A stretch of 63,878 nt of DNA, counting the filler, from Octopus bimaculoides (Eukaryota), in NCBI RefSeq assembly GCF_001194135.2. It is 7 parts of 6 records of this genome, joined end to end, with 100 filler letters (N's around TTAATTAATTAA, not from the genome) between each part and the next. Parts side by side here need not be neighbours in the genome. Positions count along the whole stretch, not along the records: positions 44,965 to 55,769 come from NC_068998.1; 6 more parts are not named here. One strand, written 5' to 3'. This document shows positions 34,911 through 52,915 of the stretch, piece after piece; position 1 is the stretch's first letter, and every line of letters starts with the position of its first letter. A program made the translations under genes and the position numbers. Under the pieces are notes generated by a model that was not told the DNA's origin, did not search any database, and worked only from the letters and a program-made list of their open reading frames with translations.

Positions 34911-36954
34911 AAAAAAAGATATGACGACTCAATCGATAGGTAGATAGATGGAGAGAGGAAGAGAGAGAGAGGGGGGAAAGAAAACGAAAGCAACAAGCAA
35001 TCATTGAGAGGAATAGTTTGAGTTGACAATAATAACCACACACACACATGCATAATATGGGTGGGGTGGAAGAATAGGGCTGAAAAGAGAGAAACAGAAA
35101 ATGTAAAAGATGTGTAGGAGGTGGATAGTGAAAAAGTAAAGAAATAAAGCAATTAATACGGAGGGGGAGAGTGGTAAGAATTAGAAATAGAAGTAGAAGG
35201 AGGAGGAGGAGAAGAAGAAGGTGAAAGAGGTGTGTATATGTATACAAAAGGAAAGGCGAGACGGCAATATATGACAACGACAATCAAAAAGTAAAAAAAC
35301 AGTAAGAAAGAAAGAAAGCGAAAGGTGAAGTGAAAGAGGAAAAAGAAAAAGAAAAAAAGATTGGCAGTTAAGCAAGAATTTCATTCAATGGTCAGCAGCA
35401 ATGGAGAGAAGAAACAACCGGAGGTCTGTGCTTGGAGAAAGGAGGAGTTTCGTAATGGACAGTAAATCTGTGGATAAAGAAGGTAGGGATATGTAGATAT
35501 ATATATTTATGTGTATATTTATTTATTTACTTACCTATATCTATCTATCTATCTATCGTATGTTGGCTATCCCTGATAGAAGGATGTTTTTGTTGTTGTT
35601 GTTTAAAGGGTTTATTAGGGGGTAAGAAAAAGAAAAAAACAGGGAGAAGTTTCTTTTTCTTTCTTTCTATCTCTGTATATTGCGCGTGTATGTATGTATA
35701 TATATATTTGTATATATAAATGTATGAAATGAAGTATGTATAATTTTCAAGAGCGAATTAAAACGAGAATTTATATGCGCACATCTCTGATACAATGTTT
35801 CTAATTGTCCGCATGTACACAGACAGTATATATACGTGCATGTAATGTGTGTTTAGCATGCATACTTTTGTCTGCATGTATAGCATTTTCAAATACGTAC
35901 AAAAATAATTTGAGTTGCTCTGTACATATTTTCATTATCTATCTATCTATCTATCTATCTATATATTTATCTATCTATATATCTATCTATCTATCTATCT
36001 ATCATCTATGTGTTTATAAACATACACACGTTCCTCTTCAGATTTTATCACACTTTCATCCCAACAACACCGTTTCTCCTTAAAACGGCATATAAGCCCT
36101 AATTAATATCGTTTATAATTAGGAAGCATCACACCATTTCACCTGTAGTTGTTATTTTTAGTCAAAAATGAACTGAGTTTCTCTTTTAGCCCCAACTATG
36201 CTTTGATAAAACGGACCCCTTACTAGAAAGCGTTTTAGTCTTAGCCATCCCGTCTTTGTTTTTCAGATAGAACTTCATAGTCCTTCCTACATGCCCAAGA
36301 ATTACCATTTCCACATCTCAGCCTTTTTTTATATATATTTTTTTTAAAGAATGATTGTAAGGTGTGATTTAAGGAAATTTTGTCGACATTCATAACCGGT
36401 TTTGCGATTACGTAGAGACAAAGTAAATACAAAACAATGCTGGTTGTGTTATATACTCCAATCATACACCGCTGTTTTATTATAATTCCCTTCACATCTA
36501 GGATGTTTTATAGAAATATTAAATTTTTCTCCCCACTTGTACATAATTTTATCGATACCGGAAGAGTGTAATGCAATGTAAACCCCGGCGGAATTTGAAC
36601 TCAGAACGTCAAGGGCCGTAACTAAATGCTACAGGCATTTAGTCCGACGCTGAAACCATTCTTTAAATCTACCACCTGTTCAAATTGTATTTATATTCTG
36701 GTGTTACTGATGTTACGAATGATTTTGATGATGTTGTTGTTATTACTGTTGTTTGTGTATATTACGGAATCTGCAATTATTATTCCTGGGTTGGGTGGGA
36801 TGGGTTGCCGAAAACTAGGCGTTTAGAAACCCGGTCTAAATGTATTATACAACATTCCACTACTTTCTTTTCTTCGTTATTTTTCATGTCTCTGGTGTTT
36901 CATTTAGTGACTTCGAAGTTTCGGTTTGCTCACCTTGCTGAGACTACATACGCA

Positions 36955-37023
<69 letters not shown>

Positions 37024-39084
37024 GCGTGTGCGTGCCAAGTTGTTAGAACGTCGGGCAAAATGCTTCGTGGTAGCTTCCGACCCTCTACACCTTGAGTCCA
37101 AGTCTCACCGATGTTATCTTTGCCTTTTCATCCTTTTGAGTTCGATGAATGAAAAAGTACCCATACCAACCAAGGCTCTGGATTGCTGGATTGGATGCCC
37201 TGCTATGGCCTACTTGGTTGGTCAACTTAACCCGTCACTTGGTTTAACAGTACTACCTGGCCACCTTAAGTGCTTTTAGCGGAGTCCACTCTTGGTGCAG
37301 CCATTCGGGCCAAGCTTCCGGTTTGAGGATACCTTCTTCCTTCCTCCTCCTCATCCTTCAATCCCGGACATACCCTTACTCTTTACAATAAAAAATTCAC
37401 CCTGTTTCAACGTAAGAAACTAATATAACAAGTGGACTAAACGAAAAATTCCCTGCCTGCGAGAGATCACATCGCTTTCTTTAATAAAGAACGTATTCTA
37501 TATTGTAGTCCTGCATATGGGACAGTCCGTAGAATCTGGTTGATTAAGATTGACCTGGGACTAAGCAAATACTCGAATGCTAGAAATATAGAAATAGTGA
37601 CTGAATCTGCCTCAAATTACACCCATTTTAACAAAGGAAAAGCTACATAGTCATTCACAGCCTTTGGTTACGGCAGCAAAGCTTATGTCTAATCGGCTTG
37701 GTTGGTCATGGTTGATTTGGGGTGTAAACAACGGCTGTAGCAACTAATATCATACTTGTGGAAATGCCGGTGACAGTTGCTGGCCGACGCAAGTTAGTGC
37801 GCCGGACGAACAGTTTTTGTTACATTCATCTCGTTATTCTATTCTTTATTCAACTTCTCGCCGGGTGTAGTAGTAGAAATAGATCTAACCGACGTGTCAT
37901 CAAAAGATTTGAGTTTTGCTCAATCAAAATAAATATATTACGTTGAAGATTGTTTAGGTCCAGGTCAGTCTTAGCTGAGTAAACCTTGTAATTAAAAGCA
38001 TTCCAGCCGTGAGCTTCTAGCCTTTTTGTAATATGTTGTCCATCCATAACTCCATTTATAAGACATTAGGGTGTGATTTGATGACGATTTGTCTGCTTTT
38101 TCTTCTAGCTTGTCGTCGGAGTGAGCTTGTTATGTATCAATGTTAGACAATATTTGTTGTCAGCAGTTGGGATATGCAACAATTGAGAGTAATTTATCAA
38201 CAAACCGAAACTGCGAACCATTTTCGATTTTCGATAGTTAATATTTACTTCTCTTCACCTACATCGGGCACCGATTGCTTTAATAACCTGAGTCTACTAC
38301 TTCTTTTTTGTGTGTGTTTCTCTTTTAAGAAATAACGGTTACTGATTATAAAGTAGTAGATTCTGTGGGTGCAAGCTCATCGTTAACCGAACCTACCTGG
38401 CTATAATATATTTTCATTTACGTCTATATTGATCTTGGGACACGTACGAATATAAAATAAAGTGCCAGTCGAGTACTTGGTAGCTTCAATATTTCTTTAA
38501 AAGCATCTTAGACGTGAATGGAATTATATCTAATACAAACAGAAACAGCGCACTGATCAGGTGTAGATATAATGCAGACGACACGGGAGAAAATACGGTA
38601 AATGAACTTAACGAACTCGCATAAGCAATTTACGTTAGTATCTTCGATCGATTGTTCATTGTTTTGCGTTCAAATCTTGCTGAGCTTTCCGTTTCTCCCT
38701 GTTCTGTAAAATAAGAATAAGTTATTTGATTGTAGATCAGTTATGCTCGAAGAGATCTGCTATAAAATGTTCCATACGTGACCATCACGTCTTTTTTTTT
38801 TTTTTAAATCAATCACGCAGTCATCTTGATTCAGTATATTCCCACCCACCCCATCCTTTTACTTTAGTCCGTTTGATAAGAATCAGTTGACGGTGGGACG
38901 ATCGTATCTATTTACCATTCGAATGAGTGATGCTCCGAAAAAAAAAAAAAGAAAAAAAAAGTCTGCCATATGTTGAAACCAGAATGATAAAAATTAAAAG
39001 AAACTGCGCTCCTGCTCTGTTTTTTTCTTCTTTTTTCTTTTTGTCAGCCTTATGGCTATAATAAAGAAATGATTACTTATCAGG

Positions 39085-44380: not shown

Positions 44381-44965
44381 TGAGCCTCATGAGTGGATTT
44401 GGTAGACAAAAACTGAAAGAAGGCCATTATATATACACATACACACATATGTGTGTGTGTCTCTGTTTGTTCCCCCCCCCCTACCAACGCTTGACAACCA
44501 ATGTTGATGTGTTTAAGTCCCCATAACTTAGCAGTTCAGCAAAAGAGACTGATAGAATAAGTACCAGGCTTACAAAGAATAAGTCCTGGAGGTTGATTTC
44601 TTTGACTAAAAACCCTTTAAAGCAGTGCTCCAGCATAGCCACAGTTAAATGATTGAAACAAGTAAAAGAATATATAGGAGCAGTTGTGTGGTAAGTAACT
44701 TGCTACCAGCTACATGGTTCCAGGTTCAGTCCCACTGTATGGCACCATGGGCAAATGTCTACTATAGCATCGGGTTGACCAAAGCCTTATGAGTGGATTT
44801 TGGTAGACAGAAACTGAAAGAAGCCCGTTGTGTGTGTATATTATATATATATATATATATATATNNNNNNNNNNNNNNNNNNNNNNNNNNNNNNNNNNNN
44901 NNNNNNNNTTAATTAATTAANNNNNNNNNNNNNNNNNNNNNNNNNNNNNNNNNNNNNNNNNNNNT

Positions 44966-46190
44966 TCAGTGTTATATGTGTTGGTGATTTTGCCCCTTAG
45001 TCTAATTAAAACCACGTCATATCACGTCGGTTCGTCATCGATCTCCATGCTAGATTTAAGGTATCTCTAGTGTATTTGGAAATTTATTGCAAGATGAATG
45101 ATAAAGGATTTGGAAGAGCAACTCGTGTCTGAAAAAATACTATTTCAAATTTGGCAAGCTTTTGCGGAAAATTTTCTGATGTTGTAACAAATCTATGGAG
45201 AGAGCTACATGAACTGTTCACAAGGCGGCAAACTGGCAGAATTGTTAGCACGTCAGGCAAAATGCTTAGCGGCATTTTGTCTATCTTTTCTAAGGAAGTC
45301 AAATCACTAAGTGCATGATTTTAAAAGCGAAATTGCAAATGCGTGGTGCTGCCGCAAAAGGAAAAGTGTGAGCAAAAGGAGAACCGAGTTACAGTCAGTC
45401 AGGAGTTATTTGATCGTTCGAATACTGATTGAAACTTTGTAGAAAGTATCATAAGATGTAATGAAATGTTGATGTATGACTTCTACGTCGAAACAAAAGG
45501 GCAGTTGTCATAGTATATTGGATAATTGTCGCTGAGACCAACAAAAATCGTGCCAAAGACACTGAAATGTGAAAGTGGTCGACTGTTTTTTTTTTTTTAA
45601 TGGAAGGACGTTCATGATGAATTTCTTTACATCAATGGTTCTTAACCGGGGCCACGTAAAGTTTTGCTGTTAAGTTTATGAGCAATAAATTGGTTATACT
45701 TCTATAATACATAAAATATTTTAACAAATCCTTAATAATATTTGATTATAAAAATATAATGGGGCTTTTTTAAACATTGAATGTTTGTTAGGGACCAGTA
45801 GAGTAAAGAGGCCCGTAGGCAAAAAATGGTCGGGAACCACTACTTTAGATGATTAATAAAGAGTTTTATTTGAATGTCAAAAGCTTTTTAATGAGAGCGT
45901 AGGCAGAAAGAGATCTGAGACATGGAGAAACAAAATCTAGATGTTGCACCATGAAAACACATCTGTTCATGCGTCATTTATATCTGTGGTGTTATGGTAG
46001 GTCACGAGATGATTCTCCTTCCCTAGCCAGACTTGGTAACTGGGGAAATTTGTTCTGTTCCCCCGAAGTTGATATCCAGCCTGAGATAACGCCGAATTCA
46101 GACAACAAAAGAACTCGAACATTCGTAATGAGAACTGCACTATACACATAAAATTACGTTCCAGTAGACATTCAAAAATAGTAGATAACA
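44966..46190 (+). mobile_element. Decayed mariner transposase, interrupted by a SINE fragment and a hAT MITE
   Basis: Successive degenerate segments: N-terminus (EQ.V.LK...KLGK.F), ENRVTVSQELFDRS...FYVETKGQ, VHDEF, INKEFYLNV...RKRSETWRNKI*MLHHENTSVH and a PDL-like/FPKL-like segment near 46020-46075. Confidence 0.7.
45633..45842. mobile_element. hAT (Charlie-like) MITE, 210 bp
   Basis: TIRs CAATGGTTCTTAACC and GGTCGGGAACCACTA. 8-bp TSD CTTTACAT (45625-32) / CTTTAGAT (45843-50). Confidence 0.8.
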
Positions 46191-46279
46191 AAAACATTAG
46201 AAACTGTGTATTTATGGCGGAGAAAAATTTGATTCAACAATAAGTAAAGCAGTAACTTAGTTTTTTTTTTTGAGAAAGA

Positions 46280-46470
46280 CGTGTTTTTTTTTTCTTTTTT
46301 GATAGACCTCATGCTTGTAGCCTGGTCTAGAAGTTCTGCATTGTGGTAGCACAATGTCTTGTGGTATTAAAACAATTTCCTGACAAAAAGCAACCTTATC
46401 TGCTGTGTGTGGTGCGGTTTGTTGACGAACAATTTCCTTTATGGTCATCCAAAAAGAAATAATCACAAAC
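46280..46470 (-). mobile_element. Highly decayed Tc1/mariner-superfamily catalytic fragment
   Basis: Reads RQQTAPHTADKVAFCQE...PQDI..PQ, resembling the FQQD.AP.HTA...WP...SPDLNP region. Confidence 0.35.
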
Positions 46471-46665
46471 CGAAAGGTCAGAAGATTGAGCAAATTATGC
46501 CATGTCACTGTATCATAAACAGATTTACATACATATCGAGAGAGAGAAATGTATAAAGGGAGAGAAAGAGGGAGAGAAAGAGAGAGAGAAATAGATAGAT
46601 TACAAGGCAATGTTTACTACCAAAATTTGTATTTGTGTGTTATGTGTATATAAGTATATATGTGT

Positions 46666-46945
46666 GTGACCGATATCCAGACGACAGTGGAGAAGGCTAG
46701 CCACTGGATTTGGTTAAAAAGAGACTATGAGCGATGGCTAGAGAAATATTGAGCTATATTTAATAACCAGATGATCTAGCAAGTGGGGCCTCATATCAGT
46801 GAGGGGGCCGGTGCGCATTGATGCCGTCGAGAGGTAGGCCCCGAAACGGCGCGCATTCTCTCCTGATGACCCTATACACTTGCTAGCTTCCGGTATGCGG
46901 AGTTCTCGACTGGTAGCACTTGCATGTGCAAGTTGTTTGCGAGAC
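46666..46945 (+). mobile_element. 3' end of an RLE-type non-LTR retrotransposon (Hero/R2-group-like), 5'-truncated
   Basis: Frame reads VTDIQTTVEKASHWIWLKRDYERWLEKY* (stop 46750-52), resembling the EKAS.W.WLKR terminus I associate with Hero-like LINEs. Followed by a structured GC-rich 3' UTR and a (TA)n tail. Clade assignment is from recall. Confidence 0.55.
46811..46878 (+). ncRNA. Candidate hammerhead ribozyme, non-circularly permuted (swapped-strand) topology
   Basis: GCCGU-C at 46823-28, then stem I GAGAG (46829-33). GAAA-CGGC at 46843-50. CUCUC-CUGAUGA at 46858-69. Stem II is imperfect (UAGG/CCUA). Enclosed by a perfect 10-bp helix (46776-85 with 46877-86). Confidence 0.6.
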
Positions 46946-48055
46946 ATTTATATATATATATACATACTTTATATATATATATATATATNNNNNNNNNNNN
47001 NNNNNNNNNNNNNNNNNNNNNNNNNNNNNNNNNNNNNNNNNNNNNNNNNNNNNNNNNNNNNNNNNNNNNNNNNNNNNNNNNNNNCATATACATATATATA
47101 AATGCATGTAAGTATATATTATGTATACGTGCGTACATGTGTACGTATGTGTATTTTTATCTATCTACACTCACTCTCATACATCTTCACGGTTGCACGT
47201 GAGTGAGTGTGTACATATGTGTGTGCGTGTGAATGTGTAACTGAAAGCTGAGTACACCTCATAGACGTTAAAAAGGAGTGCGAATGTGTGAGTCCCGGAA
47301 AACCTGATTGCGTTGATGGCTATTACGTCTATTGAACACACACTTTGATTTGCAGCTAACCATCAGCCCCGTACACTTATGCAACCAACTCTTAATATTG
47401 ACGTGTCAAGCGGAGGTTAAGTGGAGATGGCCACTTACTTCACATCCGAGACAACTGGACAACCTGGGTTTCGGGGTTCCCCAAAGGTCTCATACATCAC
47501 TGTGCAAGCCACTTTCACTTTTGAAATCTCCTCGTTACATAGGAGCTTCAACATCAAATATGCTTTTCTAGCCTGAGCCACGCTAGAAGTCTACTGGCTG
47601 CCACCTTCTGGGAGGCGGGGACTTACTGGATAGCCATGTTTGTATAGCTGTTTTTATGTTTCTCATATTCGTTTTACATATTCCATCAGCTCAACAATCT
47701 TTTTGGACAATTGTGAAATTGAGGAGTATGTATAGGTATTGCTGTTTCTGTTGTTGTTGCTGTTACTGTTGCAGATGCTGTTGCAGTTGTTGTTCTTGTT
47801 GTTGTTGTTATCGTCGTTGTTGTTGCTGTTGTTGTTGCAGCTACAGTGTCGACTGAAGTACAAGTTCATACTGTCTTGGCTCTATTTGGGAAGAAGCCTT
47901 AGGTGGTTGGTGTTATCACATGCTTGGAAACTACACCTTCTATTATCTCCCATACCGTTCAGTTGTGTGCCGTTTGACAATTTTATTTCGTATTGAATGT
48001 TTTCTGTTTCAAGTAATGTTATATAAATGATAAAATTGTTTAATTTATATCGCAG

Positions 48056-48201
48056 CTGGAGGCATTCGTGGCTTCACAAGGAGACTTGGGGTCATCAAAA
48101 AGAGCCTATCAGCAAGCAATAGAAGAGACTAAGACCAACATCAAGTGGATGAAGAAGAACTTTAAGCCAGTAAAAGAATGGTTGAAGAACACAAATACCA
48201 G
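48056..48201 (+). CDS. M1 aminopeptidase (aminopeptidase N-like) exon encoding the C-terminal helix of an ERAP1_C-type domain
   Basis: Acceptor cgcAG at 48054-55. Reads LEAFVASQGDLGSSKRAYQQAIEETKTNIKWMKKNFKPVKEWLKNTNT plus 2 nt (ag), which resembles the APN C-terminus (QA.E.TK.NIKW...N...V..W). Donor AG|GTAATT at 48202, phase 2. Confidence 0.85.
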
Positions 48202-48656
48202 GTAATTCATACACGTGTCCTTACGCATCAATACTAGAAAATGTGGGAACCTCTGTGTAATTGTCGTAACAGCTAGAAATAACAGCTAAATCTACTTATA
48301 GCCTATCATTTAAATGTGTGTGTGTGTGTGTGTCTATCTCTATGCCTAAGCGAAATATCAAAATAAACACATGCATTCATACATACATACATACATACAT
48401 ATATAGGCGGGTAAGTGGTGTTGACAAGCCACAAAAATGGCGAAACATACGGTGTCCATTACTCCCAAATGGGATTGAAGGTGAGTTATCTCGCCCGTCC
48501 ATGTCTCAGGTGTATTACACCCAGCGGTTTGAGAGTATAGATACTCCGCCAATCTATTGCATTCACCGGAAAATACACAAAACATATACATTAGTATATG
48601 TATTTAATAATGTGTGTGTGTGTGTAAATGTGAATGTGTGTGTGTATGTATGTGTG

Positions 48657-48696
<40 letters not shown>

Positions 48697-49123
48697 NNNN
48701 NNNNNNNNNNNNNNNNNNNNNNNNNNNNNNNNNNNNNNNNNNNNNNNNNNNNNNNNNNNNNNNNNNNNNNNNNNNNNNNNNNNNNNNNNNNNNNNNNNNN
48801 NNNNNNNNNNNNNNNNNNNNNNNNNNNNNNNNNNNNNNNNNNNNNNNNNNNNNNNNNNNNNNNNNNNNNNNNNNNNNNNNNNNNNNNNNNNNNNNNNNNN
48901 NNNNNNNNNNNNNNNNNNNNNNNNNNNNNNNNNNNNNNNNNNNNNNNNNNNNNNNNNNNNNNNNNNNNNNNNNNNNNNNNNNNNNNNNNNNNNNNNNNNN
49001 NNNNNNNNNNNNNNNNNNNNNNNNNNNNNNNAAAGAGAAATAAGAATGGAAGAGAGCACATGCACACACACACAAACATACATTATGTATACATATATAT
49101 ATATGCATACATACATACATATA

Positions 49124-49156
<33 letters not shown>

Positions 49157-49247
49157 CATTATTATTATTATTATTATCATTATTATTACTATTATTATTA
49201 TTATTATTATTATTATCATTATTATTATTATTATTATTATTATCTAA

Positions 49248-49404
49248 AGGTCACAATACATGTATTAAAGCCCTACTAACACATTCTTCCGGCGCAAACC
49301 ACATATCATAACATTATGACATGTGGTTTGGCCTGAAGAATATGTTTGGGTTCTCTCAACATATGAAACTATTTGTAGCGTTTAGAAACAATGTATTGTG
49401 ACCT
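49248..49404. mobile_element. Foldback MITE (Kolobok-like: AG..CT ends, CTAA/TTAA flanks)
   Basis: TIRs AGGTCACAATACA and TGTATTGTGACCT, with an inner palindrome caaaccacat-tcataa / ttatga-atgtggtttg. The superfamily assignment is tentative. Confidence 0.65.
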
Positions 49405-49470
49405 TTAAATAATAATATTTATCTCTCACCAGATAGAGTACTTTTTGCTGAAGTTTAACACATTGGAAGC

Positions 49471-49501
<31 letters not shown>

Positions 49502-49803
49502 CTTGGGCCTAAGACATCTGGTGACTTCGACAAACAAACTTACGTCCATGAAATTTCATAGTGGAACTAAGTTGAACTGTTGTTAACATGTGAATGTGTG
49601 TGCGCATGCGTGCATTCGTACCTCAGATATTGCGACAGCTGAATAGCTGAACATGTTAGTTTACTTGACCTCTGTTTCAGAGCGAATTATTGTATTATCT
49701 TGAACAAGGGCCTTTAACTATTCTGTAATTTGTAATCTATGTTAAACAGTTTCAAACGTCTCTATTTATTTACTTAACGTCTGTTTATGCACGTATTTTC
49801 CAG

Positions 49804-50008
49804 AAAAATAAAACAGTCCGTTGATGTGAGGTTACCCAAGTCCCTTGTTCCTCAGGTGTACAATCTGGAAATGAAGCCAAATATTTACTCTGGTAATCCT
49901 TCAAACTTCACATTCCAAGGGAAGGTTGACATCCGATTCTTATGCCAGAATTCAACTAGCAACGTCACCTTACATATCGTCAAACTGGAAATCCTCGGCA
50001 GTATCACT
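49804..50008 (+). CDS. M1 aminopeptidase N-like exon, start of the N-terminal domain
   Basis: Acceptor ttttccAG at 49802-03, phase 2. Reads KIKQSVDVRLPKSLVPQVYNLEMKPNIYSGNPSNFTFQGKVDIRFLCQNSTSNVTLHIVKLEILGSIT, with the M1 motifs RLP..P..Y.L and F.G.V.I and LH. Donor act|GTGAGT at 50009, phase 0. Confidence 0.93.
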
Positions 50009-50173
50009 GTGAGTCATTTTCGTGCGTTCAATATTCGTAAATTGTTTTTTTTGACTTGTTTCAGGCGCTGGACTGCAGCCATGCTGCTGCAGCGCCTTAA
50101 GGGGCTTTTAGTCAAACAAATGCAAATTGACCCTAATAGTTACCCTTTTTAAGTTTGGTACTTATTCTATCGG

Positions 50174-50433
50174 TGGAGGCGCGTGGCTTAGTGGTTAGGG
50201 TGTCAGCATCATGATCGCAAGATTGTGGTTTCGATTCCTGGACCGGGCGACGCGTTGTGTTCTTGAGCAAAACACTTCATTTCACGTTGCTCCAGTCCCC
50301 TCAGCTGGCAAAATTGAGTAACACTGCGATGGACTGGCGTCCCGTCCAGCTGGGGAACACATGCGCCATAGAAACCTGGAAACAGGGGCCATGAGCTTGG
50401 CTAGGCTTCAAAAGGGCGCATTTATTATTTTTA
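50174..50433 (+). mobile_element. Young tRNA-headed SINE family C with 15-bp TSD
   Basis: A-box-like TGGCTTAGTGG and B-box-like GGTTTCGATTCC. TSD TACTTATTCTATCGG at 50159-73 and 50434-48. Confidence 0.9.
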
Positions 50434-50677
50434 TACTTATTCTATCGGGATGTTTTGCATGTATTTGTGTTTGTGTTGTCCCCAACCACCACCTGACAAA
50501 CCAGTGGTGGTTTGTTTACGCCTCCGTATCTTAGCTGGACGGCAAAAGGGACCGATAGAATAAGTACCAGACTTTTAAACAAGTACTAGGATTGATTTCT
50601 TTGACTAAACCCTTCCAGGAGGTGCTCCAGCATAGCCACTGTCAAATTACTGAGACAAGTAAAGGATAAAACATATA

Positions 50678-50880
50678 CGAGTGGGTGCTGAAAAGTTCCT
50701 GCCTTTAAGGGTCTTGCGAAAGGCCTGGTTGGAAACCAAGTCTTCCGAGTTCTTTTACAGGGCTTAGAAAAATTGAAGTATGTGAATCTGAGAGGGGGAA
50801 TATGTTGAATAAAATCATAATTAACTGATCTTCTTGTATTTTCTTTTACCGAAAACCAGGAACATTTCAGCACACTCTTG
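50678..50880. mobile_element. Mariner-type MITE, same family as 11458-11682, no telomeric array
   Basis: TA flanks and similar TIRs. Shared internal motifs gtgaatctgagagg and gtattttcttttacc. Confidence 0.75.
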
Positions 50881-50951
50881 TATATGAAACAGTTTTGCTT
50901 TTTATTTTCCGCCGAACTTAGGCTATTTTTGTATTGCTATTCTCGTAAAAC

Positions 50952-51023
50952 TATTGGTATTGAACAATTAATTGGAACGAGTGCTGTTATTGGTATTGAA
51001 CAATTAATTGGAACGAGTGCTAT
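50952..51023. repeat. 36-bp tandem duplication
   Basis: tattggtattgaacaattaattggaacgagtgct occurs twice in tandem. Confidence 0.9.
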
Positions 51024-51327
51024 TAATGCAAGTGAGACAGAGGACACTGTTTCANNNNNNNNNNNNNNNNNNNNNNNNNNNNNNNNNNNNNNNNNNNNNN
51101 NNNNNNNNNNNNNNNNNNNNNNNNNNNNNNNNNNNNNNNNNNNNNNNNNNNNNNNNNNNNNNNNNNNNNNNNNNNNNNNNNNNNNNNNNNNNNNNNNNNN
51201 NNNNNNNNNNNNNNNNNNNNNNNNNNNNNNNNNNNNNNNNNNNNNNNNNNNNNNNNNNNNNNNNNNNNNNNNNNNNNNNNNNNNNNNNNNNNNNNNNNNN
51301 NNNNNNNNNNNNNNNNNNNNNNNNNNN

Positions 51328-51370
<43 letters not shown>

Positions 51371-52110
51371 TTTACGTTCGTTTATGTGAAATGTTTTGTT
51401 TGAATATATATATAAAAGCTCCTATTATATTATTCCGGCTACAGCCTAATGATGCCAACTGGCAATACCAGTTTTTAGGGGTTGCACCAACATGTAATTT
51501 GTGGAAATGCACGTAGATATGCATTAAAATATAAATTCCATCCAAGGATTATTATTGTTATTAATGTGTGTGTCTGTCTGTGTTTTTCCCCACCACTGAT
51601 TGACAACCGGTGTACATGTGTTTATGTCCTCGTAACTTAGAGATTCGGCAAAAGAGACTGATAGGATAAGTACCAAGCTTAAGAAAAAAAATAAGCCTTA
51701 GGGTTGATTAGTTCGACCAAAATTCCTCAAGGCGGTGCCCCAACACGACAGCAGTCTAATGACTGTATCATGTAAAAAAAAAAGATTAAAATGATTCCAT
51801 GATATTTACAACGAAATTGAATTTAAAAATACATTTATATAATTGTCTAATCTTACCAATCTTCTCAATGTAACACCACTTCATGGCAAGGATACTTTTG
51901 GTTGAATTTACTCAATTGTAAACATTTGAACCAAGCCCTATCTCCTTCTCCAAGCTCTTTTTTCCAGCAAACATTGACCAGCAGATATTCAAGCTCAACA
52001 GTGGCTGCATCAATACAGGCTTTATTCATTTATTCATGATTAACTTGCGATAAGAAACTGTAATTGAAACAAAAATTAACCAACTCTTTTAAATATTTGT
52101 GTTGTTGTAG

Positions 52111-52310
52111 GTGAAAGAACTGGGGATAAACAAAGCTATTACAGTGAGAAACTTCGAAGAAAACAAAGAGAAAGAATTCCTCGTTGTTTACCTAAATGAA
52201 GAGTTGGAGGCTGGACATCGTTATAAAATAGTGATACAATTCAAAGGGTCACTCCTTCCCGATCTCAAGGGATTTTATTTCAGTTCCTATGAATATAATA
52301 ACGAAACAAT
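52111..52310 (+). CDS. M1 aminopeptidase N-like exon (N-terminal domain)
   Basis: Acceptor ttgtAG at 52109-10, phase 0. Reads VKELGINKAITVRNFEENKEKEFLVVYLNEELEAGHRYKIVIQFKGSLLPDLKGFYFSSYEYNNET plus at, containing the GFY.S.Y motif. Donor GTATGT at 52311, phase 2. Confidence 0.93.
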
Positions 52311-52336
52311 GTATGTAACATTCATTATGCATTCTT

Positions 52337-52433
<97 letters not shown>

Positions 52434-52915
52434 TTTGATAACATTTTGATTTAGCTCTGTACAACTTAAAGTTTCGTAGGCTCATAGATCGAACCTATCT
52501 CGTCAGGCATCTAGAGAAAAATATGACACATATTCAAGAGGGCTTCCAGATGATAGGCTTCCATTGATCAATTCAAGCTACATGGTGTTATTGGTCTGAA
52601 AGCAACATCAATTCCTTTCGATATTATTAGAAGGACCTGAATTGAACAATGGCGGCCTATCTATCATCAAGACGTTCTCTTGAATTTATTTTTCCTCTAT
52701 GTCTCTTTATTCTTCTTTGGAAACCTGACGAAATAGGTTCGTTCTAAGGCCCTATGAAACTTTAAATGGTATGGAGCTGAGTCAAACTGTTATTAAATCA
52801 TATATGTACTCCTACCAAATGAGTGCCACTTTTTTCTTTGACCGCTCACACATATATGTGTATACATGTATTTGTGTATATATGTGTATGTATGTGTGTG
52901 TGTGTGTGTGTATGT

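What the first reader, a model, noticed from the sequence alone, without database searches (positions are those of the whole stretch)
48056..50008. C-terminal exon of one M1 aminopeptidase splices in frame into the N-terminus of a second: candidate tandem multi-module aminopeptidase
Seen: exon 48056-48201 encodes the last helix of an APN-type protein and ends AG|GTAATT in phase 2. The next exon has a phase-2 acceptor at 49804, giving ...EWLKNTNT-R-KIKQSVDVRLPKSLVPQVY.... The four exons join into 707 nt without a stop codon. No signal peptide or transmembrane first exon is visible in the 1.6-kb intron. Established: typical APN/ERAP proteins have one catalytic module after an N-terminal anchor. 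Inference: the gene encodes two or more concatenated M1 modules (a covalent tandem enzyme or polyprotein), probably from fusion of tandem duplicates. I cannot say whether this architecture is already annotated in molluscs.
Basis: partly seen in the sequence, partly recalled or inferred. Interest (0 to 1): 0.8.

Follow-up and report, generated by a model that had tools for sequence, protein, structure and literature searches.

The report
Two-module M1 aminopeptidase gene junction
This octopod DNA holds the point where the end of one aminopeptidase-N-type enzyme module is spliced in frame onto the start of a second, and such double enzymes are real but already annotated in many invertebrates, so this is an ordinary member of that group.

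Summary
Exon A (48056-48201) ends CAG|GTAATT in phase 2. It joins in frame to exon B (49804-50008), C (52111-52310) and D (53301-53456), giving 707 nt with no stop. The assembly gap lies inside the A/B intron between microsatellites, so it cannot disturb the reading frame. The interpretation, concatenated M1 modules, is supported by comparison, not by RNA from this species. The Argonauta hians orthologue has the same four exons (143/205/200/156 nt, same phases) and a gap-free junction intron of about 460 nt with no exon in it. Its protein is 79% identical to the window peptide straight across the junction, with dN/dS 0.09. Sepia esculenta RNA-seq contigs carry one uninterrupted 1932-aa ORF with both modules. 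In two bivalves (Mya, Solemya) the junction lies inside a single exon. The TAA after exon A is not diagnostic: any phase-2 GTAA donor gives it, including internal exon D. The architecture is not new. Two- to four-module M1 proteins are annotated in molluscs (including Octopus and Argonauta), echinoderms, arthropods, rotifers and others. I found no conserved cleavage site for a polyprotein. Low interest.

The parts
48056..48201 (+). Exon A: last helix of the ERAP1_C-type domain of module 1 plus the first half of the linker (LEAFVASQGDLGSSKRAYQQAIEETKTNIKWMKKNFKPVKEWLKNTNT-R). Starts in phase 0, ends in phase 2.
   Evidence: splice sites; 73% identical to Argonauta P0289 residues 709-759 (end of module 1) but only 33% to the end of its module 2; 74% nt identity to L003 36531-36678, ending at the splice sites.
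48202..49803 (+). Junction intron (about 1602 nt, length uncertain). Donor GTAATT, whose G-TAA gives an in-frame stop only if unspliced. Pyrimidine-rich acceptor ...cgtattttccag.
   Evidence: no candidate first exon. (microsatellites). (orthologous Argonauta intron about 460 nt, no N). (stops in all frames of that intron).
48697..49031 (.). Assembly gap (335 N, estimated) inside the junction intron.
   Evidence: flanked by (TG)43 at 48611-48696 and by ACAT/TAT arrays at 49072-49243. The two other gaps of the piece also abut (TA)n arrays.
49804..50008 (+). Exon B: second half of the linker and the first strands of the Peptidase_M1_N domain of module 2 (KIKQSVDVRLPKSLVPQVYNLEMKPNIYSGNPSNFTFQGKVDIRFLCQNSTSNVTLHIVKLEILGSIT).
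   Evidence: 80% nt identity to L003 37137-37357. Argonauta exon B' is also 205 nt.
52111..52310 (+). Exon C: Peptidase_M1_N continued.
   Evidence: Argonauta exon C' 37779-37978, also 200 nt. Pfam.
53301..53456 (+). Exon D: Peptidase_M1_N continued ([22 protein letters not shown]...). Its donor ACG|GTAATG is again phase 2 with an in-frame TAA on read-through.
   Evidence: Argonauta exon D' 38218-38373, also 156 nt. Pfam: Peptidase_M1_N E=1.9e-41 over residues 64-234 of the spliced peptide.

Best explanation
The piece covers the inter-module junction of a two-module M1 (aminopeptidase-N-type) gene of an octopod. This gene is the orthologue of Argonauta hians 'aminopeptidase N-like' (P0289) and of a 1932-aa Sepia esculenta mRNA product (P0252).

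Shown: exon A encodes the last helix of module 1. It is an internal exon, and its donor at 48201/48202 is in-frame compatible with the acceptor at 49803/49804. The junction is conserved, selected and transcribed in relatives.

Inferred by orthology, because those exons lie outside the piece: the product is a type II membrane ectoenzyme of about 1,900 aa. It would consist of an N-terminal signal anchor, module 1 (M1_N, catalytic, ERAP1_C), a linker of about ten residues (NTNTRKIKQSV, predicted flexible), then module 2. Each module keeps its zinc site HEXXH-X18-E.

Inferred: both modules trim N-terminal residues from peptides. They are tethered like beads on a very short string, so that they may pack as an intramolecular pair. 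Vertebrate APN is, from my own knowledge, a homodimer of single-module chains.

Inferred: the gene arose when tandem duplicates fused and the anchor-encoding first exon of the downstream copy was lost.
For: - Splice sites and open frame.
- Argonauta orthologue: 78.8% identity over all 236 residues, contiguous across the junction. Its exons are 143/205/200/156 nt against 146/205/200/156 nt here, with the same phases. Its junction intron has no N and stops in all frames.
- Selection: dN/dS 0.09 over 235 codons. In the linker plus or minus 10 codons, pN is 0.17 against pS 0.74.
- mRNA: 24 contigs of 6.2-6.9 kb each carry one uninterrupted 1932-aa ORF with two full M1 modules. Three of the six runs listed appear in the data-availability statements of two Sepia esculenta transcriptome papers, project PRJNA844162. 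This product is 59.5% identical to the window peptide across the junction.
- Single-exon junctions: in Mya arenaria and Solemya velum one exon encodes helix, linker and the start of module 2, and it starts at the same acceptor position as exon A.
- Paralogue: O. bimaculoides XP_014776693 has a junction intron of the same phase, with donor AA|GTAAGA.
- Linker: length is conserved across molluscs.
- Motifs and anchors in orthologues. Pfam architecture.
- AF2 model of the Dreissena junction fragment: both sides are confident, and only linker residues 91-100 fall below pLDDT 50.
Against: - No transcript or protein of the window's own species was available.
- The two searches that could have returned a model of 940 aa or more found no Octopus orthologue, so the junction is unconfirmed for this locus itself.
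- The 335-nt gap could in principle hide a small exon.
- An AATAAA lies 157 nt after the TAA (48362). At 12 AATAAA per 10.1 kb this is chance level.
- Only four exons of the gene are in the piece. Module number, anchor and catalytic motifs are taken from orthologues.
Confidence: 0.9

Rival explanations
1. Two separate tandem genes. Exon A is the terminal coding exon of the upstream gene (stop TAA at 48203-05). The downstream gene has its own anchor-encoding first exon hidden in the gap 48697-49031.
For: Read-through gives an immediate stop. Single-module and terminal modules of relatives also end a few residues after the '..WL' helix. An AATAAA lies at 48362. 335 nt are unread.
Against: - The orthologous Argonauta intron is about 460 nt, fully read and without any ORF. 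Its donor GTTAGT gives no immediate stop.
- Internal exon D has the same CGG|TAA configuration, so the TAA carries no weight.
- The linker residues on both sides of the splice are conserved and under purifying selection.
- The cuttlefish mRNA and the bivalve exons are continuous across the junction.
- The gap is bounded by microsatellites.
Confidence: 0.05
2. Both forms are made. The spliced product is the two-module enzyme. Intron retention or early polyadenylation after exon A gives a shorter, single-module, membrane-anchored isoform ending ...KNTNTR.
For: The stop lies directly in the donor. A poly(A)-signal-like hexamer follows within 160 nt. From my own knowledge, isoform choice in a two-domain peptidase gene has a precedent in somatic and testis ACE.
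Against: The arrangement is generic for phase-2 GTAA donors. It is not conserved in Argonauta, where read-through adds 15 codons. The hexamer density is at chance level. No short-isoform transcript was seen. Acanthaster planci RefSeq isoforms of different lengths exist, but I did not examine them.
Confidence: 0.12
3. The multi-module proteins are artefacts of gene prediction or read-through chimeras of neighbouring paralogues, and the window only mimics them.
For: Most database entries are automatic predictions. Some are flagged partial or low quality.
Against: Independent RNA-seq assemblies from many runs give complete single ORFs of 1,600-2,700 aa on contigs of about three times the ORF length plus UTRs. 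In Mya and Solemya the junction needs no splicing at all.
Confidence: 0.02
4. Polyprotein: the two modules are made as one chain and then cut apart in the linker by a proprotein convertase.
For: Basic residues lie in the linker: TRKIK here and in Argonauta, ERR in Sepia. The linker is predicted to be exposed and disordered.
Against: No furin-type R-X-K/R-R site is present. No basic pair is conserved across molluscs: bivalve linkers read VGVTSASRVK or VGTPHDARVK. From my own knowledge, no M1 enzyme is known to be processed in this way.
Confidence: 0.05

Closest known systems
Annotated two-module M1 aminopeptidases of molluscs: Argonauta hians 'aminopeptidase N-like, partial' (P0289, 1648 aa), the Sepia esculenta mRNA product (P0252, 1932 aa), Haliotis asinina XP_067653450 (1899 aa), and models from Mercenaria, Ruditapes and Mya (about 1,900 aa)
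   Same: Same junction: last ERAP1_C helix, a linker of 8-20 residues without a membrane segment, then '(D)VRLP...Y.LE..PN.Y' of Peptidase_M1_N. The match is 79% (Argonauta) and 59% (Sepia) identical straight across it. Exon sizes and phases are the same as in Argonauta.
   Different: Only four exons are visible here. The junction intron is larger (about 1.6 kb against about 0.46 kb) and holds a gap. In Haliotis the linker intron is phase 1, and in Mya and Solemya there is none.
Octopus bimaculoides XP_014776693 (LOC106873725) and the O. sinensis model named 'thyrotropin-releasing hormone-degrading ectoenzyme-like isoform X2' (1746 aa, taken here as its orthologue): a paralogous two-module gene of octopods
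   Same: In the O. bimaculoides gene, examined here: two M1 modules behind one signal anchor, and a junction intron of phase 2 with a GTAA donor.
   Different: Only about 37-40% identity to the window's modules. In both proteins module 1 has a divergent exopeptidase motif (xAGMEN), and in O. bimaculoides the helix just before the junction shows little resemblance to that of the other molluscs.
Vertebrate aminopeptidase N (CD13) and ERAP1/2, IRAP and APA, the M1 enzymes with solved structures
   Same: Same domain types. The best PDB matches are APN chains (E about 1e-221). The N-terminal type II anchor is seen in the orthologues.
   Different: Every solved chain is a single module of about 860-980 aa, or 1184 aa with an Fc tag. 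Here two modules are covalently joined.
Three- and four-module M1 proteins of other invertebrates: Ostrea edulis 3168 aa, Argopecten 2951 aa, Physella 3098 aa, Hymenoptera about 2,700 aa including Nasonia LOC100124285, ticks, spiders, rotifers, Chelonus 4087 aa
   Same: Head-to-tail M1 modules in one chain, also supported by transcript contigs.
   Different: More modules. Many insect forms start with a signal-peptide-like N-terminus and end in a hydrophobic tail instead of starting with an N-terminal anchor. They are distant in sequence (about 30-35%).
Somatic angiotensin-converting enzyme (M2 family), sucrase-isomaltase, maltase-glucoamylase and lactase-phlorizin hydrolase. Analogy from my own knowledge, not tested here.
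   Same: Ectoenzymes built from tandemly duplicated catalytic modules in one membrane-anchored chain.
   Different: Unrelated families and folds. This is a functional analogy only.

Membership tests
M1 aminopeptidase family (APN/ERAP type) | Peptidase_M1_N beta domain | tested here: met
   Pfam PF17900, E=1.9e-41, residues 64-234 of the spliced peptide, profile positions 1-165 of 186.
M1 aminopeptidase family (APN/ERAP type) | Zinc site HEXXH-X18-E and exopeptidase motif GXMEN in the catalytic domain | not testable with these tools
   The catalytic exons lie outside the piece, and no further exon was found up to 55769. In the orthologues both modules keep HEXXH-X18-E. Module 2 has GGMEN (Argonauta) or AAMEN (Sepia).
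M1 aminopeptidase family (APN/ERAP type) | ERAP1_C helical C-terminal domain | tested here: inconclusive
   Only its last helix (exon A) is in the piece, and alone it is too short for Pfam. It aligns to the end of the ERAP1_C region of P0289, P0252, P0080 and P0001.
Tandem (multi-module) M1 aminopeptidases | C-terminal helix of one module joined in frame to the N-terminal domain of the next by a short linker without a membrane segment | tested here: met
   (frame, splice sites). (contiguous alignment to 15 two-module proteins).
Tandem (multi-module) M1 aminopeptidases | The junction is present in mature mRNA | not testable with these tools
   No RNA data of the window's species could be reached. 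It is met in Sepia esculenta and in other transcript contigs.
Tandem (multi-module) M1 aminopeptidases | Gene structure collinear with an orthologue that has the architecture | tested here: met
   Exons of 146/205/200/156 nt against 143/205/200/156 nt, with the same phases and order, in Argonauta locus L003.
Tandem (multi-module) M1 aminopeptidases | A single N-terminal anchor and none before module 2 | tested here: inconclusive
   No anchor exon is in the readable intron or in the whole Argonauta intron. 335 nt here are unread. The anchor of module 1 lies outside the piece.
Conjoined-gene or read-through chimera | Two independently complete genes, each with its own first and last exons, between which occasional splicing occurs | tested here: not met
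   There is no first exon for the downstream module in Argonauta. The junction lies in one exon in Mya and Solemya.
Secreted polyprotein with convertase processing | A conserved dibasic or furin site in the linker | tested here: not met
   The linker alignment of 16 sequences shows no conserved basic pair.

The most novel reading that the evidence does not exclude
Tandem M1 enzymes may not be one old invention. They may have formed repeatedly, or their modules may be kept alike by gene conversion. Module 1 and module 2 are more alike within Haliotis (60%), Mercenaria (56%) and Acanthaster (53%) than any module is to a module of another class (about 35-50%). The cephalopod pair is older: 45% within a protein, but 56-60% between Sepia and Argonauta module for module. 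The junction carries a phase-2 intron in octopods, a phase-1 intron in Haliotis and no intron in bivalves. If the two modules also divide the work, as the change of the exopeptidase motif of cephalopod module 2 from GAMEN to GGMEN or AAMEN could suggest, and pack as an intramolecular pair, this would be a recurrent and so far uncharacterised way of building an aminopeptidase.
Probability: 0.3. Interest if true: 0.45.

Novelty: new member of a known kind. Interest (0 to 1): 0.22.

Why it matters
For genome annotation, exon A should not be closed as a terminal exon at the TAA. The locus should be modelled as one gene of about 1,900 aa. The searches returned no long Octopus model for this orthologue, so it may be split or missing in current annotations.

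More broadly, covalently doubled and tripled aminopeptidase-N-type enzymes are common in invertebrate proteomes and transcriptomes. Yet every solved M1 structure is single-module, and the paper searches I could run found no description of the architecture. Their enzymology is therefore open: are both sites active, do they differ in specificity, and do they pack in cis? The question is modest, and the window itself adds only one more member.

Tried and rejected
- The first protein search with the 236-aa spliced peptide returned only proteins of 413 aa or less. The tool appears to limit hit length to about 1.75 times the query, so long relatives were invisible. Searching with an alignment headed by a 1,899-aa protein and with P0289 solved this.
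I used the Dreissena fragment P0001 instead.
- The look-up of encoding contigs had no record for P0001 and P0243.
- blastn of the piece against the O. bimaculoides paralogue locus L001 found nothing. The window is not that gene.
- The exon preceding exon A (orthologue of Argonauta 35173-35256) and the exon following exon D were not found in the piece.
- A scan for a hidden first exon in the intron gave only microsatellite ORFs.
- Five literature searches for a description of tandem M1 enzymes found none.
- ARAGORN found no tRNA in the piece or in the Argonauta intron.
- All Rfam matches are below the gathering scores. The mir-297 and mir-3149 hits are microsatellites.
- I considered and dropped the idea that the TAA marks a terminal exon, and the idea that the junction acceptor simply reuses the exon-2 acceptor of an ancestral downstream copy. 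In the O. bimaculoides paralogue, intron 1 is phase 1 but the junction intron is phase 2.

Full report
WHAT IS IN THE SEQUENCE

The piece (44965-55769) is AT-rich animal DNA full of microsatellites, with three assembly gaps.
- Exon A, 48056-48201 (146 nt): cgcag|CTGGAG ... TACCAG|gtaatt.
- Exon B, 49804-50008 (205 nt): ttccag|AAAAAT ... ATCACT|gtgagt.
- Exon C, 52111-52310 (200 nt).
- Exon D, 53301-53456 (156 nt).

They sum to 707 nt and give one open frame: LEAFVASQGDLGSSKRAYQQAIEETKTNIKWMKKNFKPVKEWLKNTNTRKIKQSVDVRLPKSLVPQVY.... Residues 64-234 are a Peptidase_M1_N domain (Pfam E=1.9e-41). The first 48 residues align to the last helix of the ERAP1_C-type domain of relatives.

THE GAP

The gap 48697-49031 lies inside the A/B intron, so no reading frame passes through it. 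The question of whether the two sides are continuous and in frame therefore becomes a question of whether they are correctly ordered.
- The gap is bounded by a (TG)43 array on the left and by ACAT and (TAT)40 arrays on the right. The other two gaps of the piece also abut (TA)n arrays. This is the usual place for short-read assemblies to break.
- The exons on both sides have the same order, orientation, sizes and phases as in the fully read orthologous locus of Argonauta hians (below). This argues against a misjoin.
- The readable 1.27 kb of the intron contains no ATG-started hydrophobic exon with a phase-compatible donor.

IS THE SPLICE REAL? EVIDENCE FROM RELATIVES

No RNA of the source species could be reached, so the test is comparative.

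(a) An exhaustive HMMER search with a Dreissena fragment that spans the same junction (P0001, found, aligned) returned many proteins of 1,500-4,087 aa. In these the query matches as one stretch in the middle of the protein, for example Haliotis asinina XP_067653450 (query 3-413 on residues 904-1319). About thirty of the best 150 are 1,500 aa or longer.

(b) Profile and single-sequence searches listed well over a hundred multi-module M1 proteins with source names. They come from molluscs (Ostrea 3168 aa, Argopecten 2951, Physella 3098, Haliotis, Littorina, Mercenaria, Ruditapes, Mya, Solemya, Elysia), cephalopods (O. bimaculoides XP_014776693, O. sinensis, Argonauta hians), Lingula, Owenia, echinoderms, horseshoe crab, ticks, spiders, many Hymenoptera and rotifers.

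(c) The closest is Argonauta hians 'aminopeptidase N-like, partial' (P0289). It is 78.8% identical over all 236 window residues, aligned without a break across the junction.
- In its locus (L003) the orthologous exons are 36534-36676, 37140-37344, 37779-37978 and 38218-38373. That is 143/205/200/156 nt against 146/205/200/156 nt here, with identical phases.
- The junction intron is about 460 nt, has no N and has stops in all frames.
- Its donor is CAG|GTTAGT, so read-through there gives 15 more codons and no immediate stop.

(d) Between window and Argonauta, dN/dS is 0.09 over 235 codons (pS 0.63, pN 0.11). In the 22 codons centred on the splice, pN is 0.17 and pS 0.74. The linker is therefore read in this frame and is under purifying selection.

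(e) mRNA. The 1932-aa protein P0252 is 59.5% identical to the window peptide across the junction. It is encoded as one uninterrupted ORF on 24 contigs of 6.2-6.9 kb assembled from separate sequencing runs. Three of the six listed runs (SRR19578111, SRR20545814, SRR20545806) appear in the data-availability statements of two Sepia esculenta transcriptome papers, project PRJNA844162 (PMC10141105, PMC9538352). I checked the ORF of L009 myself. A second two-module mRNA (P0088, 1820 aa, on a 6,261-nt contig) resembles the paralogous octopod gene.

(f) In Mya arenaria and Solemya velum one exon starts at the acceptor position homologous to that of exon A. It runs through helix, linker and the first strands of module 2 without interruption. 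Here the fusion needs no splicing assumption at all.

(g) In the O. bimaculoides paralogue the junction intron is again phase 2, with donor AA|GTAAGA. In Haliotis the linker holds a phase-1 intron.

THE TAA

A phase-2 exon followed by GTAA always reads xxG TAA.
- The same is true of exon D (CGG|TAA), which is certainly internal.
- It is also true of the O. bimaculoides junction donor.
- It is not true of the Argonauta orthologue.

The TAA therefore says nothing either way. The AATAAA at 48362 is one of 12 in 10.1 kb.

WHAT THE GENE IS AND HOW IT PROBABLY WORKS

Exon A matches the end of module 1, not of module 2, of the Argonauta protein (73% against 33%).

By orthology the gene encodes about 1,900 aa: an N-terminal signal anchor (Sepia GFVLALLAIIIAIGVGIIVHF), module 1, a linker of about ten residues, and module 2. 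Both modules of the orthologues keep HEXXH-X18-E. The exopeptidase motif is GAMEN in module 1 and GGMEN or AAMEN in module 2.

An AlphaFold model of the Dreissena junction fragment is confident on both sides (mean pLDDT 86). It falls below 50 only in the ten linker residues, which suggests a short flexible tether. No basic cleavage motif is conserved in the linker, so I see no support for a polyprotein.

These parts are inference: that both sites are active, and that the modules pack against each other in cis. Vertebrate APN is, from my own knowledge, a homodimer of single-module chains.

ORIGIN

The pairwise identities of modules show that the cephalopod duplication predates the split of octopods and cuttlefish. 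Module 1 is 60% identical between Sepia and Argonauta, module 2 is 56%, and module 1 against module 2 is 45%.

Across classes there is no module-for-module orthology. Modules within Haliotis, Mercenaria or Acanthaster are 53-60% alike. Either the fusions are independent or the modules are homogenised. I could not separate these two explanations.

COMPARISON WITH WHAT IS KNOWN

All solved M1 structures are single-module chains. The tandem architecture is nevertheless widely present in RefSeq and UniProt predictions and in transcript assemblies, under names such as 'putative aminopeptidase-2', 'aminopeptidase N-like' or 'uncharacterized protein'. I found no paper describing it.

VERDICT

This is a new member of a known kind. 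The practical value is for annotation, since no long Octopus model of this orthologue appeared in the searches. The scientific surprise is small.

Noticed in passing
window 50179-50296 and 55194-55311: Two direct copies (86% identical, 118 nt) of a dispersed element that begins like a tRNA (ggcgcgtggcttagtggt...ggtttcgattcc). It is probably a tRNA-derived SINE. ARAGORN calls no tRNA in either copy.
   Followed up: partly
window 48403-48475 (+), inside the junction intron: Sub-threshold match to the hammerhead ribozyme HH9 model (30.3 bits against a gathering score of 52, full model length). The GAAAC part of the core is kept, but CUGAUGA reads UUGACAA and helix I is broken. It looks like a decayed relic, perhaps of a hammerhead-bearing retroelement.
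   Followed up: partly
window 46992-47084, 48697-49031, 51056-51327: All three assembly gaps of the piece abut microsatellite arrays: (TA)n, (TG)43 and (TA)20.
   Followed up: yes
window 44965-48055: The exon that should precede exon A was not found in the 3.1 kb upstream. Its Argonauta orthologue is an 84-nt exon 1.3 kb upstream of A', encoding SQENLFPVFYLFPSITDFFNCDHQLKQ. It may lie in the 93-N gap at 46992-47084 or beyond the edge of the piece.
   Followed up: partly
window 47739-47838: A (TTGCTG)/(TGT)n array of about 100 nt in the intron before exon A. It is open in some frames but is simple sequence, not an exon.
   Followed up: no
window 50540-50670 and 51625-51760: Two stretches share a motif (...cggcaaaag[ag]gac[ct]gatag[ag]ataagtacc...gtgc[tc]cca[ga]ca...), seen by eye only. 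They may be a second dispersed repeat in the B/C intron.
   Followed up: no
L011 19850-20260 (Mya arenaria) and L012 57202-57507 (Solemya velum): In both bivalves the inter-module junction lies within one exon. That exon starts at the acceptor position homologous to that of window exon A. The junction intron of octopods is therefore absent there.
   Followed up: yes
Proteins P0252, P0289, P0080, P0243, P0086 (module matrix): Modules of one protein are more alike within Haliotis (60%), Mercenaria (56%) and Acanthaster (53%) than to modules of other classes. Cephalopod modules are orthologous module for module. This suggests repeated fusion or concerted evolution.
   Followed up: partly
L001 (O. 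bimaculoides LOC106873725), proteins P0093, P0255, P0088: In the paralogous octopod two-module gene, module 1 has a changed exopeptidase motif (LAGMEN or NAGMEN) and a changed zinc-site context (HEVIHQWIGN). The helix before its junction also shows little resemblance to that of the other molluscs. Module 1 may have a changed or lost activity.
   Followed up: no
L003 36786-36860 (Argonauta junction intron): A tRNA-like stretch (ggcctaaatagcacaattggtagagcattgaactgaagatctaaaggtgttcggttcaatcc). ARAGORN does not call it, and it is probably a SINE head.
   Followed up: partly
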